Notes under the pieces: model-generated
What the model saw: the letters and a program-made list of their open reading frames with translations, nothing else
Told to the model about the DNA's origin: nothing
Databases searched by the model: none
IMG/VR virus record: IMGVR_UViG_3300038361_000164
Span: 146,264 to 210,263 of that record
Length of the DNA stretch: 64,000 bases
Reading direction: 5' to 3' (one strand)
Part shown: positions 1 through 57,600 of the stretch, in pieces
Numbering within the stretch: position 1 is the stretch's first letter
Layout: every line of letters begins with the position of its first letter
Made by a program: the position numbers and the translations under genes

Positions 1-883
1 ATATTGGAGCCTCATCAAATATTTCATATACCTTTCCTTTAATTTCTTTAAACCTATCGGTAAGGCCTTTTTTAGTAAGTTTAACCCAATCATAGAATTC
101 ATCTGGTACGTTATTTAGGATTTCATTGAACTCAGTGCCATCTCGTAAATATTCCCAAATGAGCCTACTAGTAACTCCAGTTAATATTCTGTGCAATCTA
201 ACATATTCCTCAAATTTGATCTTCATCATGAAGTTGTTAGAAAATCGTATAACATATCCTTCTTTGTTACTAAAGTTTTGATTCTTTAAAGTTTGGAAGT
301 CTGTATATTTATACTCTTTAGCGTGGTCAAATCCTTGTCCCCAAATACTTTTAAAGTCCCCAGTTTCGTTGTGTACCTTAGCTAACAACACTATATCGTC
401 TTTACCTTCGTACGTTATGACAATTCTATTTTCTGGATAAATTATTTCAAAAAGATATGTTGTTTCTCTGTTGAAGGTTTTCCATAGATGTCGGTGTCTT
501 GTATGTAGAAGTCTAGTTGCATGCATAGCTTGTTCAGAATTAAAACTACCCCTTGTGGCTATAAATGGGGTATTTCCGATCCAGTACATGATGCCTAGAG
601 AGCCATCTAACTTTTCTAATATGGTGTAGGACAAATTCGGTATTTCTTCTGCCGTATGCTCTTCCATATTAAAAAATTTAGGGAAAGGTCTAGATACGGT
701 ATTATAATCTTTATCTAATATCAATCCTCTGGCTATTCTAGTACATTCATTCCAGATACCTTCATACTGTGCTGATTTACTATAATTATATAGCCACAAA
801 TCCGCTGTTGGATGTTTTTGTACATTTATATATTTCTTATGTACCATGTCCAACAATAATACTACATTAATCTTCGTAGTCAT
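1..883 (-). CDS. T4 Rnl1/RnlA-type RNA ligase (runs off the window; start approximate)
   Basis: Manual translation: ...VQKHPTADLWLYNYS...ARGLILD...RPFPKFFN...EKLDGSLG...ATRGSF (KxDG motif I). Absent from the ORF track because it is truncated. Confidence 0.85.
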   Translation of the reverse strand, partial: MTTKINVVLLLDMVHKKYINVQKHPTADLWLYNYSKSAQYEGIWNECTRIARGLILDKDYNTVSRPFPKFFNMEEHTAEEIPNLSYTILEKLDGSLGIMYWIGNTPFIATRGSFNSEQAMHATRLLHTRHRHLWKTFNRETTYLFEIIYPENRIVITYEGKDDIVLLAKVHNETGDFKSIWGQGFDHAKEYKYTDFQTLKNQNFSNKEGYVIRFSNNFMMKIKFEEYVRLHRILTGVTSRLIWEYLRDGTEFNEILNNVPDEFYDWVKLTKKGLTDRFKEIKGKVYEIFDEAPI

Positions 884-2180
884 CATCATATGTTCTCTTA
901 AAACACAGGTACCAAAAGTATCCTGGGTATAAGTAGCATTTAACAAATTCTTCTTTTGTGTTTACAATGTCGTTAAGAGAATCTGAATACGAATCATTTG
1001 TAAATGTTTTAGCTAAAATAATGATATAATATGCTAATAAAAACATGATTCCTACTATGATTAAAAATATGAAAAAGCCGTGCATAGTGCTCCTTTCTTA
1101 AAGTTTTCCTTTTTTTACGCCCTCTTTTACTTGTGCTTCAGTTATGAAAAAGAAGGGCATTTTTTTAGAATTCATAACTGTCTCATAATTTGGTTTCATA
1201 CCAAACTGTCGTTCAAGTTGAGACTCTATTTGTCTGTACATAAAAGCTGCGCTTGGGCTATACATAAGATCTATATCTAACATAATGTCCCAAGTTTTGT
1301 ACTTATCGCGTCCCTCGTATCGAACCATTTTTGTCATAGTGGTAAGTTGGTTATGATTTTAAGAGTTTCTGTAGTTACTTTTCCGAAGTATGCTTTCACT
1401 GTTAAGCTTCCATCTGTGAGGTCATACCAAGACTCTGGAATCCCCCTAAGAGTATGAGTCAAATCGTATACTGTATTCTTTCCTGCTTTGCAGTATAGAA
1501 AAGACTCTCTTCGATCTCCTGGTGTTTCGATTTTAAAAGCCGTTCCAGGAGCTAAACTGTCGATCAACTCAAACCCTGTTAATTCTGATTGTGCCATCTA
1601 TTCGTCTCCTATTAAGTCAGCCCAATCGCTTTCAAATATATCATCATTTTCTTTGTAATCCTTCTCAATACGATCCACTACTTCACCACGGATACTACCC
1701 TCGTCCATATGATCATAAGCCTTTTGTGCTAAACGCTCTCTGTTTTCTTCAGTATTTTTAGTATGTTCGGGTTCAGGTCCCGTAATAAACAGTTTTAAGG
1801 TGCGGCCGTCATCTTGAATGTCTGTAGTTATTACAAACTTCTTCTTTGTCCAAAGAACATACTCTCTGCCAGGCGGATCGCCAGTACAGTGATTGATTAC
1901 TTCCAACCTGTTAAAGTCTGTCATTGTTTTTGGAATCTGTTCTGTGTTGCTCATTTTAGTTTCCTGGTTATATGCCGTGTGTGAATTCCGATTCAAGTTC
2001 TTCGAAATCCATTTCTTCCAGCTCTGTGATTTTTTTTGCTCTTAAATAGTCTAAAGCTATTTCTATAATGTCTTCTTTCTTTACAAGTAATTCGCCGTGA
2101 TCATTTACAATGTTGATTAGATCTGGGCTTTTCTTCATAACTATGAAAGAAGTATTTCCCGATTTCGAAGTATAGGACAT
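867..2180 (-). CDS. Five short hypothetical proteins (867-1085, 1098-1337, 1334-1597, 1598-1996, 1968-2180)
   Basis: Tightly packed co-oriented ORFs with overlapping start/stop codons; no recognisable motifs. Confidence 0.6.
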
Positions 2181-2764
2181 TATAGCATCTCAAGTTTGCC
2201 TATGGCATAGTTTAATACACGAGAAGATATATCATCTCCCTGTGCACGTTGTGAATGTAAAAACTCCATCAACTCATTTTCTTCTACCATAAACGATGTA
2301 ATATCTTCCAAGGCTCCTAACTTTTGAGTGCCCTTTGCGAGAGGATTTAAAGTTCCCACTGCTGTGTATACTTTTTCCGCAGACATACCAGCACTACTTA
2401 GGGCTTCTCCATACATAAAAAGACGTTTCTTGATTATATATCCTGTTTCCTCTTCCACTTCTCTGGCAATAGCCTGTGCTGGTGTCTCGCCTTTGTCAAC
2501 CATGCCGGCAGGAAATTCTATTACATAATTTTCTACTGAAGGTCTCCATTGACGAATTAATAACAGTTTATCATATTCACATCCGTTGGTATTGACCATT
2601 TTAAATATACCAACTACACCTTCTTGCTGCTTGGCTCGCTCTACAATTTCCCAATCAGATATTTTTTTTTGTCCCATAATTACTAACTGCTTAGACACAA
2701 CTTTTAAATATAGTCCCTCATACAGTGTTATTCGGTCCTGCACCTGTATCCTTTTATTGCTCAT
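2180..2764 (-). CDS. Nudix hydrolase (ADP-ribose pyrophosphatase-like)
   Basis: Nudix box GMVDKGETPAQAIAREVEEETGY preceded by QWRP...EFPAG. Confidence 0.9.
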   Translation of the reverse strand: MSNKRIQVQDRITLYEGLYLKVVSKQLVIMGQKKISDWEIVERAKQQEGVVGIFKMVNTNGCEYDKLLLIRQWRPSVENYVIEFPAGMVDKGETPAQAIAREVEEETGYIIKKRLFMYGEALSSAGMSAEKVYTAVGTLNPLAKGTQKLGALEDITSFMVEENELMEFLHSQRAQGDDISSRVLNYAIGKLEML

Positions 2765-2773
2765 TTCGTTCCT

Positions 2774-3361
2774 TTATGGTATATATAGGTTAATTGGATT
2801 GTTTTTGTGTATGTCCACATCCCATCCAAACTCATTAAATTGTTGTATATCAAAGGGATGTGTAATAATATGAAATCCGTTCTTTGTTGGAAGCGTCATT
2901 ATTATTTTATCACCATCTGGTCTACACTCATTGATTGAAGCTCTCATTGTGTCAAGTAAATCTTGACCTATTGTTGGGTTATCGACATCTATAATCCATG
3001 TTTTTAGTTTGGCATTGTGGGTTTGTCCACATGCTTTACTATATGAATTTGATATGGCCTGGCAATTACCGCTGTCCATTGTATTTGCTATATTCTGCAA
3101 GGTTTTTAAGGCCACTCTTCTATAGCTACGTTTGTTTAGACAGATCATTGCCCTTGCATTAAAAATGTCAGATAATTGTTTAATTTCTTCCCACTTTTTG
3201 TCAAGGTATTCAAGACTTCGAATGTAGTATATTTTAATTACCCTACTGTTGGAGCTTAGGTTTTCATTTTCTTTGCTTCTTTGTATGATTTGCAAAAAAT
3301 AGAAATCATCGTCCGATTCGAAAGTAAGTAAAGGTCTGATTTGTTCTAATACATTAATCAT
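2774..3361 (-). CDS. Conserved phage protein, possibly primase-polymerase (AEP)-like fold
   Basis: WIIDVD and TKNGFHII motifs resemble AEP DxD and GxH motifs; inference. Confidence 0.4.
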   Translation of the reverse strand: MINVLEQIRPLLTFESDDDFYFLQIIQRSKENENLSSNSRVIKIYYIRSLEYLDKKWEEIKQLSDIFNARAMICLNKRSYRRVALKTLQNIANTMDSGNCQAISNSYSKACGQTHNAKLKTWIIDVDNPTIGQDLLDTMRASINECRPDGDKIIMTLPTKNGFHIITHPFDIQQFNEFGWDVDIHKNNPINLYIP

Positions 3362-3989
3362 CTTCGCTCTCCGTCTCTTTCCAAGTTATGGTCCCTATGT
3401 CGGCGCGCAGTCTCCCTTCGTAAGCTCCTTCAACCATTACTAGATCTTGTATTTTATCTAATAACTGAAAGGCAAGGTCTGCTTTGTCGTGGGGATCCTC
3501 ACTGTATATGTTAATTTGTAAGTTCATAATGGTATCACTCTTGATATGTCTTGAGCTGTTCTTGTAATTGAGATAACATCGTGTATATCCATACATTTAG
3601 CGAGCATACCCATTTGTATAAGAGCTTTTCCCATTTCTGTTAATAACTCCTCGTAAATCATTGTGATGTCGAAAAGGAATCTTTGGCCGTTTAGTCCGTC
3701 GAAAACCACAGTTCCTTCCTCTAACATATGCTCATAGTTGGTTTGTCTGTTAAATTTAAGTCCCAACAGGTGTCCTGTTTCTATAATTGATTCTACTGTC
3801 AGTGGTTCTCTAGTCATAATACTCCTCAAATCGTTTTTTCTGTTCCTCTGTGAGATCGTCGCCAATCCAATCTAAGATGCCTAAATTCTTATCAATATCC
3901 CACTGTTCTTGGGCACTTAGTTTGAAATAATTTTTAGGTCTCTTGAAGGACTCTTCATACATTTGTTGTTCTGTCATTATTTCTTTCCT

Positions 3990-4544
3990 TTAATTTTTCT
4001 GATATAATTTAACTACCTCAGAAGGTACCAGTTTATCTAACTGTTTCCAAGCTAGTATTAATGTAGGATTCGTTTCCTCTTTACGCAGATTAGTATAGAA
4101 CTCTGAAGATTCTTTTTGATACATTTTATATTTGTGAATACTATGATGTATGCTGAAATTTATGTTAGCTATTCGATCGCAAATCTTAACAAGTAAAGAT
4201 ATGTCATGATATTTACTTGTCTGGATTTTCTTATACATAACATCTTTTCGCTCTTTTCGAGTTTTACCAACACCGTCAGTCACATCAAATACAATACATG
4301 CTACTGTTTCTCCAAATTCGTTTTCTAGTTGAGAATACTTCAAATCAGTATCTTCAAGAATATCGTGTAATATACAGCCCATAATAAAGCGTTGTTCATT
4401 CTTAGGGTGCATTTCCGCTTTTCTAATCATAAACGAAGCTGTAGTAACTACAAGCTTTAAATGATAAGTATAGGGAAATATGTCATATCTCTGTCCATGA
4501 TGTGCTGCTTCTGCAACTAACCATGCTTTTTCTATTTGTCCCAT
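3990..4544 (-). CDS. HD-domain hydrolase of the RelA/SpoT hydrolase (Mesh1/SAH-like) type
   Basis: AHHGQRY..PY..H, LHDILEDT, VKICDRIAN. Confidence 0.8.
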   Translation of the reverse strand: MGQIEKAWLVAEAAHHGQRYDIFPYTYHLKLVVTTASFMIRKAEMHPKNEQRFIMGCILHDILEDTDLKYSQLENEFGETVACIVFDVTDGVGKTRKERKDVMYKKIQTSKYHDISLLVKICDRIANINFSIHHSIHKYKMYQKESSEFYTNLRKEETNPTLILAWKQLDKLVPSEVVKLYQKN

Positions 4545-4996
4545 TATATTGTCTCCGCTATGTCATATATCATATGAGCGTAGTTTGCGATGTCTGTACA
4601 TTCCTTTCTTATCTGTTCAAGTTTGTTTTTAGTCTTTCCCGCTTCAAGAATTTCGCGAAGCTCGCCAAGTTCACCTTCAAGCTGCTCAAACAAATACCAA
4701 TGACTACATTCTTCCCATCCACCTTTACGGTCGTTTTCTTTTAAGATTTCCTCCATCGCATATGCAAATTTAAATACTGATGGTCGGACTCCGCTGGCAA
4801 GAATGTCTGCAGTTCTTATTTCTGGCGCCGTTTGTGTTTGTGTTTGTGAGGGCTTGTTTAGTGTTTGAATATAATGTCTGTTCGGAGTATCATAATACCC
4901 TTTATCCCATTTTATAATATAGAATTCTCCTTTTTCCGTATCATAATATACTCCGTTATCATGATCCGCCATCATTCCTTCTGGTAAGTTTTTCAT
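4544..4996 (-). CDS. Protein with C-terminal MazG-like all-alpha NTP pyrophosphatase domain
   Basis: EGELGELREIL...KECTDIANYAHM (ExxE...ExxD pattern). Confidence 0.5.
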   Translation of the reverse strand: MKNLPEGMMADHDNGVYYDTEKGEFYIIKWDKGYYDTPNRHYIQTLNKPSQTQTQTAPEIRTADILASGVRPSVFKFAYAMEEILKENDRKGGWEECSHWYLFEQLEGELGELREILEAGKTKNKLEQIRKECTDIANYAHMIYDIAETI

Positions 4997-5169
4997 TGTT
5001 TCTTTTGGTTAAATGTCGTACATATCCTGAGGTGGATACTTTTGTTCTTCTATTATTTGATTGATCTTCTTATTAAGAAGCTTTTTTGTTTCTGTTGGAT
5101 TATCACTAACTATTCCTTCCTTAACTATAGTAACAATTTCCATTAGATGTGAATCGTCTAGTTTTATTT

Positions 5170-8100
5170 TCATTTGGTTTTCCTTGTGAATTTGAAGTAG
5201 CTCCAGAAGGTACTTTTCGGTTTGTCGTTTCCCGCTTTCAGTGGTTTGTCAAGATCTAGATTGACATTAACTGTTTTCGGCACATACCTACCTATTGTAG
5301 CTATTGGAAGTATCGTCCTTCCGTCTAGCTGTTCATCTATTTGTAAACAATTTGCGGGTTCTGATATAAAATGTGCTACTCCGTGTGAATCGTATCCTAA
5401 GATTATTTTTTTACCCTCTTTGTTATTACAAATAAGAGCTCCTATCGTTAGGTTGCGTTTTTCTAGGTCCGCTGCGATAGCATCGTGGGTTTCTCTATAC
5501 TTTTGAATATTCTTTTCGTCTATAAGCTTCTGATTTGCTTTTTTAAGAATCTGATTGTCGAAGTATAAAGATTCCAGTAGAGGTTTTATAGTACGCTCAA
5601 GCTCATACCCTAATAAATTGTGTTTTGCTGGACGCGTCAGCTGTGGACGCGCGTCGAAGTACTCATCGATGAATTTTGTTAAGTCATTATCTGTCATGAT
5701 GTTTTTCCTTTCTGTTTGTTTGGCCATTTACTTAAAAAGAATGGTTTCCTCGATCGTACTCCTTTTATTGGTCTTTTATGTGCATCAATAAAAACTTTCG
5801 CATCATTTACTGTTACACCATGAAAGGTGTAACTTTCAAGATCATCTTCTATTTTTCGTATATATGCCAATTGTTTGGCTGTGGCTAAGTTTTCTTGTCT
5901 CATGGTGTTCTCCTTTCTTCTGTTATATCGATTGATTCTTTTCTTCGATCTGAGTATTCAACAAATCGTGAGGTTAAAGAAACGGTATTGTTATGTGTAT
6001 TATTTACATAAATGTAGTTCCAACCATTGGGAACTCTGTGTACAGTGACACGTAAAATTGCAATATCTTCTACAATAGGTGCCAATGTAGTACTTTCATG
6101 TAATTCTAAGGCCCATATGTCTTTCATAGTTCAGTCTCCTTTGTAATTATAGAAAATAATCCAAAACTAATGGCTATAAGGCTGCACAACAGCCCTAAAC
6201 CGCTTATATCCCAAACAAATAAATACCACCACGATGCAGCTATAAATGTCCAGGCAGATAATATATATCTTTTCTTTTTAGTTAACACAGCTACACTCCT
6301 GCGGCGGGAATACGCACTCTGTAAGTATCCAACGGTCGTCTAGTACTGGTATTCCACCAAGCCCGACACAAGCATCAATGGCTTGTTGTGGTCTACTGGC
6401 TAAGGGTTCTCCTGTTAGTGGATCTGTCTCTGCACATCGTGTGCTAAGTCCTACGAGAAGGAGGCATATTGTTATTGTCCATATTAATCTAGTTTGTTGG
6501 CTATAGTTCATATTAAGGTTCCTTATGTTGTACAACAGTTCTTAAACGGTTGAGTGATTCTTGTGGTGTATGTCCGTCATATTCAAATGCTACTTTATCC
6601 AGCTCAGGTATGTTAAACAAATACCAATGTTTCATTTCATAGTGATTAGAAATTTGTCCTTCTGGCAGTAGTGCCACTACAACAAACCAGTTTGAGCTTC
6701 CAAAACATTTTTCGCCATCGTGATGTCTTTTAGACTTGTGAACATGATACTTCTTTTGTGTGGCCCATTCATTAAACAATGCTGCGTTATACATCATCCG
6801 ATATTCATATAACTCGTTAAAAGTATGTAGTCCGTCTGAAACATCTCCCGGCATAGTATCGACGGGTAACACAATATCATATCCTAATACCACATTTGTT
6901 TTACTCATTATTTTGTTTTCTTTCTTTTTTTTAGTGTATTTGATTACAAAGTCTTCTGTCTTTTAAGCTTAGTAGTTTTCTCACTACGGGGCACATGAAT
7001 TCTAAACATACCCAGCTTCTCAATCTATATGGTAATGAGCATCCACCTTTTCTCCAAAACCCTACTTCTTGCTTAAATAACTTTTTATATATCTGTTTAT
7101 CGTAGTAAGTAGGTTTATGGCTGATGTATCCTTTATGTGCATAACATAGCTGACAACATCCTTTTTCCAAGTTCTCAGGATTCTTTGTTGTGGCGACTTT
7201 AATGTATGGAAAAGCATCTTGAAACTTATCAGATCGAGAATATGCACATCCTGTTTGATCTACGTTGCAAGGAAAATTTATAGTTTTAACATCCTTAGCT
7301 GTTTGATTATGTTCTTTGGTAAGTACTTTGCTACGTGTCTCGTGTTTCTTAAAATGCTCTGTTAACATTTCTTCAGGTGTCATGTGTCTTGCGTTTGATA
7401 TTTGCATTTGTTAGAAGATTTCTATTACATAGTCTTTGGGAAGTATTATCAAGGGTGTCCCTACAGGAAGTCCTTCATAGTGGTATTGTTGGATTAAGAT
7501 AGGGACTGTGGCTTCTTCCAAGTGTACAACGTGGACGTCCCAAGAATTAGCGAGATCGTTTAGATTAAAAGCCTCTCCTTTATCAGAAACACTAGTTAAG
7601 TGATATTCTCCATCATTATCGATTTTAATATCGTTGATGGTGTATACTACTTCGTAGAGGGGAGGTTGTTCAAATGTAGCTCCTAAATACCCTATCCAAC
7701 ACAGTTCTGCAGCTACAAGAAGGAGAATAGTGCTGTAAAAAATATTACTGATAATATGTCTTTTTCTTTCTTTTTTCATTATTTAGTTTCTTTCTAGTTT
7801 TTTGTTAAAGTCAGTGGAATAATATGTACCTCTTTCCTCTGCGCCGAACTGGGGTTTTATATTGAAAGAGTATAAATTACCTCCAAACCTTTGTACTACT
7901 TTATAGTGCTTCTGTAGGCTCTTCATACTTCTTGTGCGTGAATCTCTTCTCGGGTTTTTTTGATATTAGCAAGGAGTCTTTCTTGTAGAGTTTGAAGAAG
8001 TGAGTCCTTTTCTTTGCCAATAACAGTTACTGGCGGTATATTACTACCATCGTGTTTGTCTATGATCTCCAAATAGTCTCGTGTTTTGAGTTTGCTAATT

Positions 8101-8981
8101 GTGTTAAGATCCTGTAGATCCTTGGCTAAGCTTTCAGCTAAGATCTGTAAGTTCTTTAGTGTATTTGTTTCGGTCATTAGAATATTCCTCTTTCTATTAG
8201 TTTTGTTAAAAGTTCGTCACCGGCAAGTACTTGCTCTTTCAGCATTACTTCATGTGCCGAATAAGTACCTGGAGGTGTTGGAACAGAATCTGCAAAGTGT
8301 TGTCCATTACGCCAGTATTGATTCAGGTCAGGTGTCTCATACCACAAAGTATCTGCTTCTTGCATACTAGGTTGTGCTGATACAAATTTTGTGTCACATG
8401 TCCAAATTTCTAGATTAGGGTAACAAGATTTATCTCCCACGGCATTCTTCAGCATTTTTAGACAGTTTTCCACACTGTCCATAATAAATAACTTTGAATA
8501 CTTTATTTTTGGCTGTATCCACTCATCTTTAATGTATTCTAGAGATGTGCCATATTTAATATTACGTCTAGTTGTGAACATGTTCATGGAGAATAGTCTA
8601 TCTTTATAGATGTCTCGATTGGATCTTTTCACTACCTTATAATAAGGAGGTGGATCGGGAGTACGTGGTTTGGCAGATGCAAATATTGGAGTTCCAGTAT
8701 TACGTTTCATATTATAATTCCTTAATCTCTTTCAGTGTTTTGTCCACCTTATTCTCATAAAATATACGTAGGTAGTTAAGAAGGCCGGCTTGTACATCTT
8801 TGTCTGTAATTGTTAAATGGTGATTTTCATCTGCATTTGATAAATGTAGTTTGCCTGTTTCGAATTGTTCTAGTTTTATCACAGATTGCAGTTTCCAAAT
8901 ACTCTTTTCCAGAGTTGAGGTATGCTTTATTAAGTTGTCAAGCTTATTAGCTTGCTCTTTGTTTGTTTGAGATTCGCTCAT
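5170..8981 (-). CDS. Cluster of short early hypothetical genes, including 6513-6908 (SDGLHTFNELY, WDGH-like family) and Cys-rich 6931-7407
   Basis: Contiguous co-oriented ORFs with TAATG/ATGA overlaps. Confidence 0.6.
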
Positions 8982-9637
8982 AATTTTTCTTTCCTTAATA
9001 GTAAGACTACTTTTTACGAACTATCACTTGTTTATCGACAAGGTTCAGCTCTGCTGTGTATTCTTTAGGTGAATACTGTTTTTTTAACTCTGCTACCTTA
9101 ATTGGATCCGCCATCCATTTATACATAGAGGTTTCGGATTCAAACTGCTTAGCTATTATTGGTTTTGGCATGATTTGTTGGGTCCTTGTATTGTTAGTAT
9201 TTGTTTAAAAGTGGCGATTATCTACATAGGTGTTTTCTCTATTACTGACAAAATGTCTGTAGAAGTCTGCCACGAAATACGGGGTTTGGTGTTGGTTTTT
9301 GGCTGTTTTTTGTCGATTCTGCAAATTTTCGGTTCGATTTTGATCAATTTTTGACGATTTTGATCCAAAATTTTGGGGACTTTATAAGATTTGGGAAACA
9401 TTAAAGGCCAGAGTTTGGAGATTTGGGTCTATTTCATATATGAATGCGGTCTATGTATGGGCTAAAAAACGAGAAAAAAAGTGCGTTTTTTGCTCAAAAT
9501 GAAGTTGGTTTTGAACAGAATTGCTCAAAAAGGGCCAAAAACGGAAGGCAAAGTGCCGATTTCTCGAAAATTATTTGTTTAAAGTACCAGTGATGAAATA
9601 ATATGTACGTGGTAGGAACGTTGTTTTTGCTTACAAG

Positions 9638-9875
9638 GTTTACAAGGGCTTGTAAAGTAATAAATACTATTAATATTAAGTACTTACTTAGGTAGTTTAC
9701 AAACTTACAAGAAATTTAGCCAGGCGTCTAGCTTGAGCGTTTTAGCTTTTTATGTTTTTCGTTTTCTGAGTTGGCTCAGAAGTAGTTGCATGTGTTGTTT
9801 TCTTGTAAATTTGTAAACTGTTTGGATAAGTGCTTGTTATTAATGCGGGATATCGGTTTACAAAGGCTTGTAAAC
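9638..9875. repeat. Imperfect 77-bp inverted repeat built of TTACAA/TTGTAA units; candidate replication origin
   Basis: Arms 9638-9714 and 9799-9875 are reverse complements with scattered mismatches, in a gene-free ~800-bp region with A/T tracts at ~9290-9570. Confidence 0.6.
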
Positions 9876-9952
9876 TTAGAGGTAGCTTGTAAACCTATAT
9901 ATTTTTTTATGCTATGATTAATATAATTGCAATTTACTGGCACTACACTGCA

Positions 9953-11351
9953 CTACGCTGTGTTGCTTTGGAGTACTGCTTTGCGTATACTGTGCATTGA
10001 TATTACTATTCCACACATTTGTCTGATATCTTTTTGCACTATCTCTGTATCTGACGAGCCTGGATAGATATTAAGAGGATCGCCAAGAAGTGCTATTGTA
10101 TTGTTGCATGACTCTGTGCAAGCTTCTATTATATCTTCATGGTCCTCTTCACTGTGCACATTTACTGCTAATTTTGTTAGAGTATCGTATGTTTCCCGTA
10201 AATAGGTTATTGTTTCGTCTTTGTTATTAGCTTCAAAGCTAAGAACGTTTTCTCCTATTTCTTTAATTTGAGCTACTTGTTCGTCTATTAAATTCGGCAT
10301 ATGTGTTTCTTTCTTGATTAGTTTGATGTGGTCAAAGACTCTTACTTCGAATCCCATTTCTGAGGGGTCTGTGTTTTTCATCAGATACTCCTTATTTCGT
10401 TATTACAACCGTCTCCAATATTGGTGAGGTATTGATCTAGAGTATGTAAGAATTCTGGAAATCGTTTCTTATTTATGTGAATGGTTTTATCTAAATAATC
10501 ATGACCACTGTTTCCAGGCTGGTCAGCTTTAATATAGATCTTAATAGAGACTGTGGATTTATCCTTTAGTAGCTTGGCTATTTTTCTTTTTTGTACTCTA
10601 GTCTCTTCTTGTTCTTCCACAAGATTAAATACTGTGAGAGCATCTTTCATTTCCATTTGGTTATTCCTTTTTAAGTATGTCTTGTGTTAATAGTTTTGAT
10701 AGGAGCTCAATTTGTTCATCTAAATACTCCTTTGTCTGATTTTCAAAGAAGGTTAACAGCTGCTCGGCAGCTCCGGTGGCCATAATCTCTAACTGGTTTG
10801 TTTCACTGAAGATTATTAGTCCCTTAATTCCTTCATCTTTGACTCTTTTACATTGTTTTATTGTGCCGGCGGCGTGAGCCATACGGTCAGTGATCTTTTC
10901 TCGTTGTTCGTAAGTAGGGTCAGCCATTACTCAGCTATCTTTAATGAGATTTCTAACTCAATAGGGATATGAGAGGCCAGTTCACGGTTGGCAATCTGTT
11001 TTTCGTCTTGATTTACTAGAAATTGTGTGTCAGAGACGTGTTCATGAAATTCTTCCAGTATATTGGACATTATTTCTTCTACATCAGCTATTTCAGGTAT
11101 TAAAATACTTATATTCTTCGAGTCAGGCATATTATATCCTTTTTAAGTTAAAATTAATTAAATGCGCCTTCCACCAAGGCGTTAGAGAGTTCCGCAGTAG
11201 TAATGTCATGTTCTTCTAATTGCTTTCTGAATCTAGAGAGATATATCTTTAGGGCCATCTTGGCTGTATCAGGCTTTTTCGCGTTCATGAGTATCTTTTT
11301 TACGTTCCTTTCTTGCTCTGGTGTTAATAGTGAGCTATTTTCAGTTTGCAT
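9953..11351 (-). CDS. Five short hypothetical proteins
   Basis: Packed ORFs 9953-10381, 10381-10656, 10661-10927, 10927-11130, 11154-11351. Confidence 0.6.
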
Positions 11352-11379
11352 TTGTTTGTTGGTTGTTTGTTATTGAAAT

Positions 11380-12100
11380 ACGGCTTAGATGACTGGGGTC
11401 ACCAGTCACCTAAGGAGCGATGAAACGGGGTAGGAATTGCGCCGCGATAAACAGTTGAGTTAATTAAATTCATCTGGTAGCTACATTTACCTCTAGTTTT
11501 GCCCATCTCAATTCTAAAAATCTGTCCTGGTAGTTAATTCTACTGATTTATTCACCCAATTTCAGGGATGGTCAAGACGATAACGCCTTGGCTGGTGGTT
11601 CAGCTAATCTATACGCCCTTTAGGACGGTCAGGAAGTGTGCTTACAGTCTTCAAGCGCTGTAAGTTTATTTTTATGTGATCGTCGGGGTGTTCTTGAAGA
11701 GAACAACACTTGCCTCCCACATAATTAGTTGCCCGTCTCTGGAAAGCGGGCTAGTTATATCTCCAAGATTAGTCCAGAACCATCTTGGCGCATTGTAATG
11801 CTACTGAACCAATTGTTGCATTTGTATTGTGTTTGCGTTTCTTCGGAATTTTGTTACTCTCGCCCTGAACCTGCCATTCATCTAATTGATGACTTAACAG
11901 GGGAGCGCATAACGATGTTCCAAACTCCTGGCCTAGAGTACCTCATTTTCAGCTTATGATATAAGACTCGTCAATTGTGCACAAAAGACAAGGGTTAACC
12001 TTATAACGTTGCTTTATAGAGTTTTTGTATGATTCGCAGCATACTACGAAGCGTGAGCTGCATATTAATGAATTTCTTGGGAAAGAAACACTTACACAAA
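11380..12100 (-). ncRNA. Candidate large structured non-coding RNA
   Basis: No credible ORF, higher GC than flanks, many hairpins (e.g. 11384-11414, 11641-11664, 11731-11751, 11763-11788); lies downstream of the promoter motif at 12234. Confidence 0.45.
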
Positions 12101-12102
12101 TT

Positions 12103-12181
12103 TGGGCTCCAAGTAGGGACGAACCTACACATATCTAGAGTACGCAGCTCGACGTGTCTAACACGTCGGAAGCATTGGAGC
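12103..12181 (-). tRNA. Aberrant tRNA-like element with CUA anticodon loop
   Basis: GCTCCAA/TTGGAGC acceptor, enlarged D hairpin, GCGTA-CTCTAGA-TATGT anticodon arm, no variable loop, GTAGG-TTCGTC-CCTAC T arm, 3' CCA. Confidence 0.5.
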
Positions 12182-12370
12182 ATTGAAATGTTGGGGTATA
12201 TTTATGAAATACACGCTAAGGTGTTATTCACTATTCTTATACCCAATTTCCTGAGTATTACAGGGTTCCATCTGATTTGCAACGTATCCTGCGGTAATAG
12301 ATAATATAATTACTAGGATCATGTGACCTATAAATCTACACGTAGCATCTTTCATATCAATCCTTTCTAA

Positions 12371-13108
12371 TTAATTACCTTTACCATACAGCCACAATTG
12401 TACAGTAGACAGTGTCACTATAATACAGGTAGCAAGTGTATGATTTGCAGCTAGCCATTCCACTACTATAGGGTACCACCATATAGACACTTGAATTGAC
12501 CACCAAGCAAATGTTATATTTATCACTACAAAGAATAGAAGAACGATTCGACGTACCCATTCGTTAGGAGGCGGAGATAAGTAGTATATAGCAACAGCTA
12601 TGACAGCGATCATATTTACTACCAAAAATAAATAAAATAACATATTAATCCTTTCAAATTAAGTTGTTTGTTACACCATTCTTATACCCAAATACTAGTT
12701 ATTTTCATAGGTAAAGCTGAATTGATGTTTCTTATCGCCTACCAAGTCCCAGATGTCTGTATTATCGGAGGCGGCGTTAACGTAGGCGACCATTTTTGCA
12801 TCTCTTAAGAAATAGACTTCTGTCTCTCTGACATCTAATTCATCGAAAAGGATTGTTAGTATATCTAAGGGCTGAGCATAATGAGAGAACTTCCATACAT
12901 CTATTGAGTAGGTTAGGTAGTCTACAATTATGACATAACTAGCCACATAGGTTTGAGTCGGTATAGGTAATGCGTTTGAATGTTCTAGCAAAGTAGCGGA
13001 CACATCGGTGACTACAAGCTGGTCGTAAACTAATACAGATTGTTCAGTATCAGTGGTGTAAGCAAATGAGCACAGTAAAATTAGTATACTGTATAGGTAT
13101 TTATTCAT
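12371..13108 (-). CDS. Membrane protein (12371-12643) and signal-peptide-bearing protein (12695-13108)
   Basis: Hydrophobic segments; each has its own GGTATAAGAA motif upstream. Confidence 0.6.
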
Positions 13109-31223: not shown

Positions 31224-31329
31224 TCTTTATCTTCCTTTCTTTTTTTTTGATAATTAAGATTTGATTACATACTATTCTTATACCAATTTTAAGCTAAAAA
31301 AAGAGAAGGGGGTCCGTCTCTTTTTCCTT

Positions 31330-32500
31330 ACTACTAAAAATAGAAAAGAATTTACATTTAGTTGAGGTTTACACGAAAGATAGACTCGGCACTTCGTAGA
31401 AGGGCTGAACAATCTTTCTTGTTTACGTCAAGTATATGCAAATTCAATTGCCATTCTGTGAATTCTCTATACCTAGAGAGTTCTTGTTTCGTTCAGATAT
31501 TCCCATACCTGCGTATGCGTAGCACATGCGTTTAAACGAATCTAGTAAAATTAAATGTTTGGGCTTTTTACTACAAAGCGGCAAGAGATGTTTAAACCTT
31601 GGTTTACTCATCTTGATTTGCCAAGTAATTAGTTGGAACCCAGGCACGTAACGTACCTGTAGACATAGTCTAGTAAAAAGTTTGGATAGTTATTTATCAC
31701 TAAAGAAGTACGGTTTCGAATAGTATACCCTACGTATTATGGTTTGGCTGGATACTTGCGGGTTAAGACGAGCTTATTGTGGGACCGCAGTCCCATTCAA
31801 GCGCTGTCTTATCCGGCGCTAAGTAGTCGGTCGAAACATAATACACTTGGTATACTAAGTGGAACCTGGTTCTCTCGAACATACTCTATGTTCTTTGTTT
31901 AAGTCTGTTAGTTTACAGACTTCCATATGCGAAACGCATCTGTTAAACGGTCTAATAAATAAGTTGGTTTTCCTTCACTACTAAAGGTCGAAGAAGCTTC
32001 TCTTATTCGCGGCTATTTACATTTCATCCTTCTGAGAGTACTTCACCGTAGAGACACTTCGTAAAAGTTAATCCTTGAATAACTTTGCGGAGGGTTTCCT
32101 GAAGTAGGATCAGAAGGGTACAATGAAACGGAAATAGGGGTGAATTCGTTGGGACCAGAGGAGATTCGAGATCTTTGGATGGAGACCATATCGAATAAAG
32201 GAATAATCGTTCGGACATGCTGTTCGACCGTTTACCGATGTTGGAGTTCCGGCATTAAGATTTAAGGCTGGAACGACCTAACCCGGTAAATGGTTCGGGA
32301 CAGTGTCTGAATGTTATACCATATTTTGATATGCGGAAATAAGTAAACAGTAGCCTTACGCGGTTGTTTACGGTTTCCTTGTCTGGAGTTATTAACGAAA
32401 AAGAAATAAGTCAATAACGATCAAATGCGAAACGCATCTGTGAGAATTCTAGTAAAGGTGAGTCCGTAGGTGAAACGGACTCTAAAAGAAAGGAATATAA
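31330..32500. ncRNA. Candidate large structured non-coding RNA (strand uncertain)
   Basis: ~1.2 kb with no credible ORF in either code; long helices (32211-32310, 32460-32482); repeated ATGCGAAACGCATCTGT at 31927 and 32425. Confidence 0.45.
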
Positions 32501-32544
32501 CATGAGGTCATATTACATAATTCTTATACCCTATAATATTTTTT

Positions 32545-32965
32545 TAGTTGGTAAGCTCGAAGGTGAATCGAGCTATTTGTTACCAAACCCATTATAAGGA
32601 GAGCTGTAAACTAAGCAATACCCAAATTCTCGATATTACTTCTCTGTTACAGGGATGAATGAAAGGTTGTCTGTCACGATCCGCTAAGATCATAACTATA
32701 GGATTCCATTAACTGGAGCCTGCCCATTATCCCGGGCCAGTTACTTTATTTGTGGAAAGTATAAACCTGTGGGTTGAATCTCACCTATGAGCAGTTAATT
32801 GACAAATACTCGATTCAGAACGACAAGCGTTCAAAGCAGAAGCGTAGAGCAGGAAGATAGAGAGATGGACTCTACGCCATGGATATTCGTCCGAAGACAA
32901 ATATCGTAAATCAATCTCGGAGGGCTAAGTATGTGTGGCCACACAATATAAGCAATCTCCGAGTA
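32545..32965 (-). ncRNA. Candidate structured non-coding RNA downstream of a tRNA-like element
   Basis: Successive hairpins, including a C(UUCG)G tetraloop stem with a G-U pair on the minus strand at 32882-32905. Confidence 0.45.
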
Positions 32966-32974
32966 TTAAAGACA

Positions 32975-33065
32975 CTGTCGTACCGAGACTCGAACTCGGG
33001 AAGGACTCAAAGTCCCACTGTCCGCTTAATTTGTACTCCAGGGCGATCAGGACCTGGCCACGCAG
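32975..33065 (-). tRNA. Aberrant tRNA-Gln(UUG)-like element
   Basis: Canonical T arm CCGAG-TTCGAGT-CTCGG; GGGA-CTTTGAG-TCCT anticodon arm; bulged acceptor CTGCGTG/TACGACAG; enlarged D region. Confidence 0.5.
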
Positions 33066-33172
33066 TTCTTTAATAAGTTTAAATCTTTAGTAATCTCTTA
33101 CTCATCATTCTTATACCAATTTTTGATAAAATAATCCTTTACACTTACACGGGAGTATTATATATTAACAAT

Positions 33173-54693: not shown

Positions 54694-57600
54694 ATGCAAA
54701 ACATAAAAGGTGTTTTTGCTCATACAAGCTTTATAGGAAACTCTGGATATGCTTCACATGCCAGAAATTTTTTCACCAAACTAAATAAACATATCTCAGT
54801 AAAGATACGTAATTTTTCCATAGGAACTCATTGGGACGGAGTGTATAGAGCTGATCCTCATAAAGAGGAACCTTACCTTACAGACCAACATAGAGAAATG
54901 CTTGTCACACAAATTTGTATGAATGAGCCAGGAGAAATGATTGACCACGATCTGTATGGAGGCCCTCCCGATTTAACAAATTTTGTTAACATAATTCTTC
55001 ACGAAAGCCTACACCACAACTATTACCATGATTATAAAGGATTTAAGATAGCATATAATGTTTGGGAAAGCACTGAGCAATCTCCAGACTTTTTTGAAAA
55101 ACTCTTAGAATATGATCAATTATGGGTACCAACTCAATGGCAGCGGGATTGTAGCATAGCGCAAGGATACCCGGCTGAGCGTGTTTTTGTTGTACCAGAA
55201 GCAGTAGACAATGAGGTGTTTAACTTAACGCCAGTAGCACCATTAGAAGAGATGAAAAACAATCGTTTTAAGTTTATGATTTTTGGTCGTTGGGATCATA
55301 GAAAAGCTACTACAGAAATGATTAAAGCATTTTTGGAAGAGTTTTCAGCAGACGAACCTGTAGAACTTATCTGCTCTATAGATAATCCCTATCCCGTAGA
55401 TGGTTTTAAATCAACGCAAGAACGATTAAATCATTTTGGCTTTAACGACCCTCGTTTAAAAATAAAAAGCTTTATCAGTAGAGATGATTATATTAACTAC
55501 TTGAAGAATGGAAATGTTTTACTTACATGCTCTCGCGCGGAAGGTTGGAATTTGCCATTAATAGAGGCAATATCTTGTGGCACTCCGACTATATGTTCCA
55601 GCCACCCAGCTCAACTTGAGTTTGCCACTGATGTATCTTGCCAAGTTCGTACCAAAGAACAGCGTCCAATGAAGCCTTTTATGTTTGCCCCAGACGGCTC
55701 TGGTCTATGGGATGAGCCAGATTTTGAACATTTAAAGGAAGTTATGCGCGATGTATATAATGATTATAACAAATATAAAAAGAAAGCTATAAAAAATGCT
55801 ACAATAGTATCTAACAAATTTACATGGGAAAATGCAGCTGAAAAAGCTGTTACAATTTTAGAACAAATAGACAAAAATATGAATAATATACCTACATTAA
55901 AAAAAGAAAAGAAAGCTTATGTATTAAGCACAGATGAAAAATATTTACCATACGCTAAATTGTGTGTTGAGAGCTTGCTAATGTTTGATAACACAGATGT
56001 AATCGTATATGTAATTAACGCCGACAAAGAGCTTGACTGGGGCTGGTTAACACATCGAATAGATATTCGCCCAATTAAAACAGATTTTTCCTGGAACGTG
56101 GACGGACTACAAAATCCAGGTCATTACTATGCGCGAATTATCTCAGCTATAGATTGCCTAAAAAGAGACACACATCAAAGCTATATGTTTGTAGACGCAG
56201 ATATGATAGCGGGTAAAGATGTTTCCTATCTTTGGGAATACAAGAGCATGTTACAAGACTATCCATTATGTATTCAATATAATTCACCAAACTGGTATCA
56301 ATGGAGAGAAGTAGATGGTATTAAGTATAACGCAAGTTATGGAAAAGAAACCTCTGAAATTCTAAATGAAGGTATTCGTAAAAGTAACTCACACATAGCT
56401 GCAACCGGTTTTTTTCTATTTGATATTGAAAGTATGGAGTTTTTATCTGAAGTCTTAGATGTGTATAATACACAAAGACAAGGAATAACTTGGAATGTGA
56501 AAGATTCACATGGGAAAAATATATTTGTAGATGATAATGCTTTATCAGAGGAGCGAGTGTTAAACTATCTTATGTGGAAGTATAAGAGAAAAGCAGTTAT
56601 GCCTGTTACCTGGAATTTTCCAAAAGAATCTCCTATAAAAGATAGGTTTAATGATAAGCAATTGTTAGCATTAGATATGGGAAACTTTTCAGTAATGTAC
56701 GATATGAGTAATAATAAATTTTACGGAGCACATCCAGAACCTGGTGAAGGAAAAAATGTAGAGTATTCTAAAGATTTGTGGAAGAAATTTAATCCCAATC
56801 GTCGAAAGAATTTAATGATTGTAGCGCATCTTGATGATGAAACTATATTTGGTGCGGGCACTCTTTTAAAGAACCCTAAAGATTGGCACATTGAGTGCAT
56901 GACAGGTGCTGATGACAAACCACGTATGAATGAGTTTTATTCAGCGCTAGAGACACTTGGTATGGAAAGTACAGGCGTTTCTAATTACACAGATAGCTTA
57001 GAATATCCATTTCCAGAGGATGCAAAATATCACATTGAACATCTTTTAGCTGTCAATGACTACGAGATGGTGGTAACACATGGAGAAGAAGGTGAGTATG
57101 GTCACGTACAACATGTTAGTCTTCATAACATTGTTAAGGACTGTAATCCTAAGGGTTTACATTTTTTTGCGTTAGGAACAGAACCTCTCGATGCTGAAGT
57201 ATATAAAAAGAAACAAGAAGCTTTGGCTCACTATAAAAGCCAAGTAACTGATTTGCCAGGATTTCATAAGTATTTAAGATATGAAACAATTGTACCTGCC
57301 GGCACACAAAGCAAAAAGAAAAAGTTTGAGAAATCAGACTTCCTTAAAGATTTTAAACCGAAGGAAGCTGAAATTACGCCTTTTAAACAAATAACCATAA
57401 ACCATAATTTTATAAATGGCCCTTTTGTAGAAATACTTGGAGATGATCCAGCTCTTTTTTCTATAGAAATGAAAAACAATGACGTATTAATACATTCTAC
57501 ACAAATACATTCAAATCATTGGACTGTTGCAAATATAAAACATTATCAGGATTGGAATATCGAAATTAGTAAAGATGGCAAAATTATTGAAACACTATTG

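What the first reader, a model, noticed from the sequence alone, without database searches (positions are those of the whole stretch)
11380..12243. Promoter, aberrant CUA tRNA-like element, then ~700 nt of structured RNA
Seen: about 50 nt downstream of a GGTATAAGAA motif is a cloverleaf with a perfect 7-bp acceptor, an 8-bp D hairpin, an amber (CUA) anticodon loop, no variable loop and a 6-nt T loop. A hairpin-dense ORF-free tract follows. TAG appears to be a normal stop in this window, so simple amber suppression is not evident. Inference: a tRNA mimic (processing signal or decoy for anticodon nucleases) heading a large ncRNA, reminiscent of the tRNA-associated phage RNAs GOLLD and ROOL.
Basis: partly seen in the sequence, partly recalled or inferred. 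Interest (0 to 1): 0.7.

Follow-up and report, generated by a model that had tools for sequence, protein, structure and literature searches.

The report
Abundant orphan phage RNA behind tRNA-like element
A marine jumbo phage makes, from one of its standard early promoters, a tRNA-shaped element followed by a highly folded non-coding RNA of about 550 nt that piles up in ocean metatranscriptomes and matches no known RNA family.

Summary
The GGTATAAGAAT motif at 12243 is the consensus early promoter of this 210-kb seawater phage and its relatives. Fifty-two nt downstream, 12181-12106 folds into the described cloverleaf. A tRNA-geometry descriptor finds only this element and seven true tRNAs in the genome, and nothing in 10 shuffled genomes. 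It is still not a tRNA by ARAGORN or the Rfam tRNA model.

The tract from there to the next gene (11351) has no plausible ORF, also with TAG read through. It folds better than shuffles (z -4.9).

New evidence: eight marine metatranscriptomes hold 100%-identical contigs covering only about 12078-11528. Ends recur at 12078/12078/12077/12073 and 11533-11527. Flanks are nearly empty. So the stable RNA is about 550 nt, not about 700. It starts 27 nt after the cloverleaf and excludes it.

No homologue was found, so covariation could not be tested. All Rfam families, GOLLD and ROOL included, gave no match. Strand, exact ends and function are inferred.

Best reading: a precursor in which a tRNA-like module precedes a large trans-acting structured RNA. 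That is GOLLD/ROOL-like in layout, but it is not a member of either family. The decoy idea is untested.

The parts
12233..12243 (-). Consensus early promoter motif GGTATAAGAAT (extended -10-like, tTGGTATAAG). The start site is inferred near 12229.
   Evidence: The motif recurs about 23 times (1 mismatch or fewer) in the genome, nearly all in gene direction and mostly 20-70 nt before a start codon. One copy lies 62 nt before tRNA-Asn. It is conserved in relatives: G001, L038, L039, L042.
12195..12231 (-). Small 5' leader hairpin.
   Evidence: Fold of 12232-12185: -7.2 kcal/mol, z -2.9.
12106..12181 (-). tRNA-like cloverleaf: 7-bp acceptor, long rod in place of the D arm, CUA in a 7-nt loop, no variable loop, 5-bp T stem with the 6-nt loop UUCGUC.
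   Evidence: MFE equals centroid, z -3.6. It is the only non-tRNA hit of the descriptor, with 0 hits in 10 shuffled genomes. Rejected by ARAGORN default and by the Rfam tRNA model.
12103..12105 (-). CCA directly after the acceptor stem, with no discriminator base.
   Evidence: Read from the sequence. Several true tRNAs of this genome also encode CCA.
12079..12102 (-). U-rich spacer between the cloverleaf and the stable RNA. It includes a degenerate copy of the promoter word (AAATTTGTGTAAG). In the precursor fold it can pair with 11844-11827.
   Evidence: Absent from all RNA contigs.
11845..12078 (-). Domain A of the stable RNA, about 234 nt. The 5' end of the RNA contigs is at 12078.
   Evidence: RNA contigs end at 12078, 12078, 12077 and 12073 in four runs. 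X20 covers 11836-12073 at depth 57. Helices are listed.
11812..11844 (-). A/C-rich linker, probably unpaired in the mature RNA. Several contigs break here.
   Evidence: Contig breaks at 11834-11840 (X12, X20). Other contigs bridge it (X14, X15, X21). Fold.
11596..11811 (-). Domain B: a multi-branch domain closed by a 9-bp helix (11811-11803 / 11604-11596), with five hairpins.
   Evidence: Covered by RNA contigs in X12, X14, X15, X18, X22 and X24.
11528..11595 (-). 3' hairpins of the stable RNA. Contigs end at 11533-11527 (...CUACCA). A U5 run follows at 11520-11516.
   Evidence: Contig ends at 11530, 11528, 11533 and 11527. One contig reads through to 11476. Folds.
11352..11527 (-). Structured trailer, or leader of the next gene. 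It holds a perfect 13-bp hairpin at 11414-11384, then a CA-rich stretch before the ATG at 11351.
   Evidence: Fold z -3.5. Almost absent from the RNA contigs.
11154..11351 (-). First downstream ORF (65 aa, ORFan), followed by a terminator-like hairpin at 11181-11165.
12224..12355 (-). Upstream ORF (43 aa). Its 3' end overlaps the promoter.

Best explanation
One of the phage's standard early promoters (12243, minus strand) drives a non-coding precursor. In order it holds a short leader hairpin, a tRNA-shaped module (12181-12106, followed by CCA), a U-rich spacer, and a two-domain, heavily base-paired RNA of about 550 nt (12078-11528). That last part accumulates in infected cells as a discrete species, far above the neighbouring mRNAs.

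The tRNA-shaped module keeps the acceptor/T-stem minihelix. That is the part recognised by RNase P, the tRNA 3'-end machinery and the CCA-adding enzyme. It has lost the D-loop/T-loop elbow and the variable region. So it most likely serves as a handle for host tRNA-processing enzymes, separating the leader from the large RNA, and not as a decoding tRNA. The large RNA then acts in trans as a structured non-coding RNA (scaffold, cage or sponge), as proposed for GOLLD and ROOL.

Shown: the promoter family, the cloverleaf geometry beyond chance, the absence of coding capacity, the excess folding energy, and a discrete abundant RNA with recurrent ends.

Inferred: the strand, the precursor-product relation, the processing role of the module, and any trans function.
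For: - Promoter family and its use before genes and a tRNA. Conserved in four relatives.
- Cloverleaf is MFE and centroid, z -3.6. The descriptor gives 7 tRNAs plus this element, against 0 in 10 shuffled genomes.
- The distance from motif to element is 62 nt, the same as from the promoter at G000 118860 to tRNA-Asn.
- No ORF, also with TAG=Q. Gene callers leave an 872-nt gap.
- Fold z -4.9 for 892 nt and -3.2 for the 566-nt core on the minus strand, against -3.6 and -1.8 on the plus strand. Coding flanks give z about 0.
- Eight metatranscriptomes from at least two independent sources hold 100%-identical contigs only within 11476-12078, at depth up to 57. Flanks over 5.5 kb are at depth 0-2 apart from one 165-nt contig at depth 7.
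- Another ORF-free tract of the same phage (31330-33117) is held by no listed RNA run. So the signal is not DNA carry-over.
- GOLLD and ROOL are phage RNAs often near tRNA islands. One marine GOLLD lies downstream of a Met-tRNA (PMC12286853).
Against: - No homologue was found, so there is no covariation and no evidence of selection on the structure.
- Ten contigs from other samples are 100% identical across the tract.
- The contigs carry no strand information.
- The 5' end at 12078 lies 27 nt beyond the cloverleaf, not at its 3' side. That cut removes the 5' strand of a helix that would close domain A in the precursor fold.
- No RNA contig covers the cloverleaf itself. Short RNAs are normally lost in such libraries, so this neither supports nor refutes it.
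- There is no convincing intrinsic terminator at the 3' end.
- Other intergenic tracts of this genome also fold well, so a z-score alone is not specific.
Confidence: 0.5

Rival explanations
1. The tract is a long structured 5' leader of the downstream early operon (65-aa ORF and following). It would act in cis, for stability or for timing of translation. The 550-nt species would be a nuclease-resistant decay or processing intermediate with no role of its own.
For: - It lies between a promoter and the next ORFs on the same strand, with no strong terminator between them.
- One RNA contig reads through the 3' end, to 11476.
- The trailer 11527-11352 is also structured and ends in a CA-rich leader without a Shine-Dalgarno sequence.
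Against: - In all eight runs RNA abundance drops sharply at about 11528, and the downstream ORFs are nearly uncovered.
- The other promoters of this type sit 20-70 nt from their start codon.
- An 890-nt leader for a 65-aa ORFan is out of scale.
Confidence: 0.2
2. The cloverleaf is a decayed tRNA gene, and the tract behind it is lineage-specific filler. It would be transcribed because it sits behind a strong promoter, and would survive because it happens to fold. It would have no function.
For: - The element keeps the spacing and outline of a tRNA gene but fails tRNA tests.
- The tract has no homologue anywhere.
- The early regions of this phage family turn over fast, and their flanking proteins are ORFans.
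Against: - Phage genomes are compact, yet 0.9 kb is kept unchanged in ten contigs from different samples.
- The RNA has defined recurrent ends and is the dominant RNA of the neighbourhood.
- The fold excess is specific to the tract compared with its flanks.
- Relatives keep analogous promoter-driven hyper-structured tracts.
Confidence: 0.12
3. The cloverleaf is the functional part. It would be a decoy or mimic with a CUA loop that titrates a host tRNA-directed defence (anticodon nuclease) or a tRNA-modifying enzyme. The large RNA would be secondary.
For: - tRNA-like geometry beyond chance, with an intact 7-nt loop carrying U33 and a purine at 37.
- The phage invests heavily in tRNA biology: 26 tRNAs, a tmRNA and a canonical tRNA-CUA elsewhere.
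- Further odd tRNA-like elements sit in the tRNA island.
Against: - Nothing shows that the 76-nt element accumulates.
- The anticodon stem is weak: 5 bp, two of them G-U.
- It lacks the elbow that most tRNA-binding enzymes use.
- It shows no significant sequence similarity to any tRNA of the genome; the best alignment score lies within the range of shuffles.
Confidence: 0.08
4. The abundant RNA is transcribed from the plus strand (about 11528 to 12078), as an antisense or independent transcript. It would then be unrelated to the promoter and the cloverleaf.
For: - Logan contigs have no direction.
- An A/T-rich -10-like word (TAAAAAT, 11515-11521) lies 7 nt before 11528.
- The plus strand also folds, with an MFE of -155.9 kcal/mol.
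Against: - There is no matching -35 and no copy of the phage's own promoter motif on that strand.
- All genes from 1 to 13108 are on the minus strand.
- The plus-strand fold z is only -1.8, against -3.2 on the minus strand.
- The sharper of the two ends is 12078, as expected for a 5' end in random-primed libraries. This last point is inference.
Confidence: 0.08

Closest known systems
[quoted passage not shown]
   Same: Phage or prophage encoded, very large, ornate fold, no ORF. Often next to tRNAs; a marine example lies downstream of a Met-tRNA, and tRNAs can sit inside its linker. It has two domains joined by a poorly ordered linker, and is expressed during infection (PMC12286853).
   Different: No match to the Rfam model, even at E up to 10 on a 611-nt query. 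About 550 nt rather than more than 800. The neighbouring 'tRNA' is not a real tRNA. No homologues, so no shared conserved 3' domain can be shown.
ROOL RNA (rumen-originating, ornate, large)
   Same: Similar size class (my own knowledge: roughly 500-600 nt). Encoded by phages and prophages near tRNA islands. Abundant, with no protein partner known (PMC12286853).
   Different: No match to the Rfam model. The locus is 27 kb from the phage's tRNA island.
tRNA-linked processing of non-coding RNAs: MALAT1/mascRNA, phage T4 stable RNAs C and D in the tRNA cluster, and bacterial 3'-ETS sRNAs released from tRNA precursors (my own knowledge)
   Same: A tRNA or tRNA-like fold in one transcript with another RNA. 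tRNA-processing nucleases define the ends, and the non-tRNA part accumulates.
   Different: Processing here is inferred, not shown. The observed 5' end lies 27 nt beyond the tRNA-like fold. The released RNA is far larger than bacterial 3'-ETS sRNAs.
Canonical tRNA / suppressor tRNA(CUA)
   Same: 7-bp acceptor, 5-bp T stem opening with UUC, a 7-nt loop with U33-CUA-R37, CCA after the stem, and the same promoter spacing as a true tRNA gene of the genome.
   Different: It is rejected by ARAGORN and by the Rfam tRNA model. The true tRNAs of the genome score 30-73 bits.

The T loop has 6 nt. There is no variable region. The D arm is replaced by an 11-bp rod without GG, and there is no discriminator base.

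The genome has a canonical tRNA-CUA elsewhere, at G000 115365-115439.

Membership tests
tRNA | Recognised by tRNA detectors (ARAGORN default; Rfam tRNA covariance model at 29 bits or more) | tested here: not met
   ARAGORN finds 0 genes in the window. Rfam gives no tRNA hit at gathering score, or at E up to 10. At a relaxed ARAGORN threshold a different 70-nt fold is called. The true tRNAs of the genome score 30-73 bits.
tRNA | 7-bp acceptor stacked on a 5-bp T stem (12-bp minihelix) | tested here: met
tRNA | 7-nt T loop (T54-A58 pair) and a D loop with G18/G19 forming the elbow | tested here: not met
   The T loop is UUCGUC (6 nt, no A58). The D region is a 3-bp + 8-bp rod with a 3-nt loop.
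tRNA | Anticodon arm: 5 bp, 7-nt loop, U33 and a purine at 37 | tested here: met
   The loop is CU-CUA-GA. The stem has 2 G-U pairs.
tRNA | Variable region of at least 4 nt, and a discriminator base before CCA | tested here: not met
   0 nt between the anticodon and T arms. CCA follows the acceptor directly.
tRNA | Aminoacylation and decoding | not testable with these tools
   Needs biochemistry.
GOLLD RNA | Match to the family covariance model (conserved 3' domain) | tested here: not met
   All 4227 Rfam 15 models were scanned. There were no hits at gathering score over the whole genome. No GOLLD hit appeared at E up to 10 on 1.7 kb, and no hit of any family on 611 nt.
GOLLD RNA | Phage-encoded, adjacent to or containing tRNAs | tested here: inconclusive
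   It is phage-encoded and directly behind a tRNA-like fold, but that fold is not a tRNA. The tRNA island is 27 kb away.
ROOL RNA | Match to the family covariance model | tested here: not met
ROOL/GOLLD-type RNA-only assemblies | Homo-oligomeric nanocage formation | not testable with these tools
   Needs cryo-EM or SEC-MALS.
Self-splicing introns and self-cleaving ribozymes | Match to the Rfam intron or ribozyme models; flanking exons that join into a gene | tested here: not met
   No Rfam hits. The ends of the RNA (C|AAGAA... and ...CUACCA) do not fit group I or II splice-site rules, as far as I know them. The flanking ORFs are complete and unrelated.
Structured ncRNA in general | Compensatory base changes among homologues | tested here: inconclusive
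   No homologue could be found, and all available copies are identical.

The most novel reading that the evidence does not exclude
This is the founding member of a new class of large ornate phage RNA. It would be made as a tRNA-like-plus-lncRNA precursor from an early promoter, and would be abundant enough to be assembled from bulk ocean metatranscriptomes. It would also be one example of a family-wide habit: these marine jumbo phages each carry lineage-specific, non-homologous, hyper-structured RNAs of 0.6-1.2 kb behind the same conserved early promoter. Examples are window 31330-33117 and L042 15290-16190 (z -9.6).
Probability: 0.4. Interest if true: 0.75.

Novelty: new variant of a known kind. 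Interest (0 to 1): 0.6.

Why it matters
Large structured phage RNAs such as GOLLD and ROOL are known, and their structures are now solved, but their function is not known. They were all found by sequence conservation.

This RNA was found without conservation and has direct environmental expression evidence. It has defined ends, a defined promoter and a tRNA-shaped neighbour. That makes a testable construct of about 700 nt for processing, probing and assembly studies.

If the pattern in the relatives is real, jumbo phages would hold a reservoir of fast-evolving large RNAs that comparative methods cannot see.

Tried and rejected
- Known RNA families. Rfam was run at gathering score on the window, on the rest of the genome and on the relatives' loci. 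It was also run at E up to 10 on 1.7 kb and on 611 nt. Only tRNAs and a tmRNA turned up, all elsewhere in the genome.
- Hidden gene under another code. TAG=Q does not open the tract. Genome-wide ORF coverage is normal under code 11.
- DNA homologues. Searches that found nothing:
  - blastn (distant mode) against 50,697 phage records
  - blastn and nhmmer against relative G001 and the loci of four other relatives
  - own genome, for paralogues
  - three exact-word scans of IMG/VR
- Covariance models. Single-sequence models of both halves (R1, R2) were run against G001, the window and five relatives' loci. They gave only sub-threshold hits: two in G001, neither in an analogous early-region tract, one in the window, and one inside a called gene of L042 (identical in L043).
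- Synteny route. The flanking small proteins are ORFans. The nearest conserved gene (691 aa) led to G001, L034, L038, L039, L041 and L042/L043. None carries the RNA.
- Strain variation. Ten contigs from other samples are 100% identical over the tract.
- Second promoter at 12078. The upstream word is a degenerate copy of the promoter that lacks the key A and has the wrong spacing. It does not recur elsewhere.
- RNase III model for the ends. The cuts are not staggered across the predicted 12099-12082 / 11844-11827 helix.
- Strand from G-U counts. Not decisive.
- Descent of the cloverleaf from a tRNA of the genome. The best alignment score lies within the range of shuffles.

Full report
**Context**

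The window is the last 64 kb of a 210,263-bp virus record (G000:146264-210263) from a seawater metagenome, GC 36%. The phage encodes 26 tRNAs and a tmRNA in an island at 104-131 kb. One of the tRNAs is a canonical tRNA with anticodon CUA. Genes from window 1 to 13108 all lie on the minus strand. The finding must be read on that strand.

**The promoter**

GGTATAAGAAT at 12243-12233 is not a one-off. With at most one mismatch it occurs about 23 times in the genome. Nearly all copies point in the direction of the genes. Most sit 20-70 nt before a start codon that has an AAAGGA-type ribosome-binding site. One sits 62 nt before tRNA-Asn.

The same word marks the early regions of every relative I could fetch:
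- G001: about 25 plausible copies among 30 matches with at most one mismatch.
- L038: 3 copies.
- L039: 11 copies, and L042: 8 copies.

It reads like an extended -10 promoter (TGG-TATAAG). That it is a promoter is an inference from position and conservation.

**The cloverleaf**

This fold is both the MFE and the centroid: -29.7 kcal/mol, z -3.6, and 0 of 200 shuffles fold as well.

I wrote a descriptor of tRNA geometry and ran it on both strands of the genome. It returned seven true tRNAs and this element. It returned nothing in ten dinucleotide-shuffled genomes. The descriptor was fitted after the fact, so the test is lenient. Even so, the resemblance is not chance.

Two more tRNA-gene features:
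- CCA follows the acceptor directly.
- The distance from the promoter word to the element (62 nt) equals that of a true tRNA gene.

Against this, ARAGORN and the Rfam tRNA model reject it, while the true tRNAs of the genome score 30-73 bits. The T loop has six bases and lacks A58. There is no variable region and no discriminator. An 11-bp rod stands where the D arm and its GG loop should be.

What survives is the acceptor/T minihelix and an anticodon-like hairpin. I therefore call it tRNA-like, not a tRNA.

**The tract**

From 12223 to 11352 there is no ORF with a ribosome-binding site. Reading TAG as sense does not help. JGI's gene calls leave the same 872-nt gap in every copy.

The 892 nt fold with z -4.9 on the minus strand and -3.6 on the plus strand. 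In 200-nt windows the excess is confined to 11250-12350, while the coding flanks scatter around zero.

**What is actually made**

The tract is held at 95-100% by nine seawater DNA runs. Parts of it are held by eight metatranscriptomes from at least two independent sources. When laid on 5-5.5 kb around the tract, the RNA contigs are 100% identical to the window and fall almost only inside 11476-12078:
- One end recurs at 12078, 12078, 12077 and 12073.
- The other end recurs at 11533, 11530, 11528 and 11527, with one read-through to 11476.
- Depth reaches 19 and 57.
- The flanks show nothing, or single read-length pieces at depth 2-7.

A second ORF-free tract of the same phage (31330-33117) is held by no listed RNA run. 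The signal is therefore neither DNA carry-over nor general phage transcription.

So a discrete RNA of about 550 nt accumulates. It begins 27 nt after the cloverleaf, ends about 175 nt before the next ORF, and does not include the cloverleaf. Libraries of this kind would lose a 76-nt RNA anyway.

Several contigs break at 11834-11840, in an A/C-rich linker, and others bridge it. The RNA may therefore also exist as two pieces of about 240 and 300 nt.

**Predicted architecture**

- Domain A, 12078-11845.
- Linker, 11844-11812.
- Domain B, a multi-branch domain closed by 11811-11803 / 11604-11596.
- Three 3' hairpins, followed by a U5 run at 11520-11516.

In the precursor fold the spacer (12099-12082) pairs with 11844-11827. 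The mature 5' end removes that strand. I could not explain how the end at 12078 arises:
- There is no recurring promoter word upstream.
- No ribozyme model matches.
- The cuts do not fit a staggered RNase III cleavage.

**Strand**

The contigs have no direction. The minus strand is favoured by the promoter, the gene orientation, and the better z-score (-3.2 against -1.8 for the core). The sharper end at 12078 also points that way. G-U counts do not decide it. I put about 0.8-0.9 on the minus strand.

**Homologues**

None were found.
- blastn against 50,697 phage records gave no match.
- The nearest relative in IMG/VR, G001 (204 kb, 55% identity in the SNF2 helicase, collinear core), lacks the early region. 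It gave no BLAST, nhmmer or credible covariance-model hit.
- The flanking small proteins are ORFans among 5.8 billion proteins.
- A profile of the nearest conserved gene reached 1155 relatives. I fetched the loci of the six best. None has the RNA.
- Three exact words from the RNA or the cloverleaf are absent from IMG/VR.
- Ten contigs from other samples are identical across the tract.

**Comparison with known systems**

The layout 'phage, tRNA(-like), then a large ornate RNA with two domains and a linker' is that of GOLLD and ROOL (PMC12286853). Membership was tested with the Rfam models and is not met.

As a working analogy it also resembles tRNA-linked release of non-coding RNAs (mascRNA/MALAT1, T4 stable RNAs, 3'-ETS sRNAs). 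That comparison rests on my own knowledge.

I file it as a new, so far orphan, variant of the 'large structured phage RNA next to a tRNA' kind.

**A wider pattern, seen in passing**

This phage has at least two more ORF-free, strongly folding tracts behind the same promoter word. One is 33117-31330, with z -9 for 32878-32219. The other is 9952-8982.

Relative L042 has a promoter-driven, terminator-closed tract of about 850 nt with z -9.6. None of these tracts is similar in sequence to the others or to any Rfam family.

**Verdict**

There is a real, abundant, large non-coding RNA behind a real promoter and a real tRNA-like fold.
- The RNA is shorter than proposed and separate from the tRNA-like fold.
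- Its structure is unsupported by covariation.
- The roles proposed for the tRNA-like element remain untested.

Noticed in passing
window 31330-33117 (minus strand): A 1.8-kb tract with no credible ORF. It holds two copies of the early promoter word (33117, 32530) and a strong terminator near 31320. The part 32878-32219 folds with z about -9. A canonical T-arm-like hairpin (CCGAG-TTCGAGT-CTCGG) sits at about 32999-32983. There is no Rfam match, and no listed RNA run holds it.
   Followed up: partly
window 8982-9952: A 971-nt stretch with only tiny ORFs, among densely packed minus-strand genes. It folds with z about -5 on both strands and has no Rfam match.
   Followed up: partly
L042 15290-16190 (minus strand); also L042 1265-2201, and the gene map of the P0008 contig (gap of 944 nt): Relatives of the phage carry analogous ORF-free tracts. 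The L042 tract runs from a GGTATAAGAAT promoter to a strong intrinsic terminator. It is about 850 nt, z -9.6, with no sequence similarity to the window's tracts and no Rfam match.
   Followed up: partly
G000 118555-118722 (outside the window, in the tRNA island): There are two more aberrant tRNA-like elements that ARAGORN does not call.

One has a canonical T arm (GTAGG-TTCAAGT-CCTAC, the same stem as the finding's T arm) and a CAT loop.

The other is an 8-bp GC stem followed by TACCA.
   Followed up: no
G000 115365-115439 and 104475-104855 (outside the window): A canonical suppressor-type tRNA(CUA) and a tmRNA (tag GKTQFALAA). TAG is nevertheless an ordinary stop, ending 22 of 201 long ORFs.
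   Followed up: partly
window 12091-12103 (minus strand): AAATTTGTGTAAG is a two-mismatch copy of the promoter word with its upstream A/T stretch. It lies just before the 5' end of the stable RNA. The spacing and the missing A argue against activity.
   Followed up: yes
window 62355-63740: A 461-aa collagen-triple-helix-repeat protein in a block of GC 0.48-0.50, against 0.36 for the genome.
   Followed up: no
window 54694-59214: A 1506-aa protein that combines glycosyltransferase (GT4, GT9), PIG-L deacetylase and FkbM methyltransferase domains.
   Followed up: no
L002 1716-3020 (G001 82383-83687): Relative G001 seems to encode a CCA-adding enzyme just downstream of one copy of the promoter word. 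I recognised it by eye from the HD-domain sequence and did not test it with a profile.
   Followed up: no
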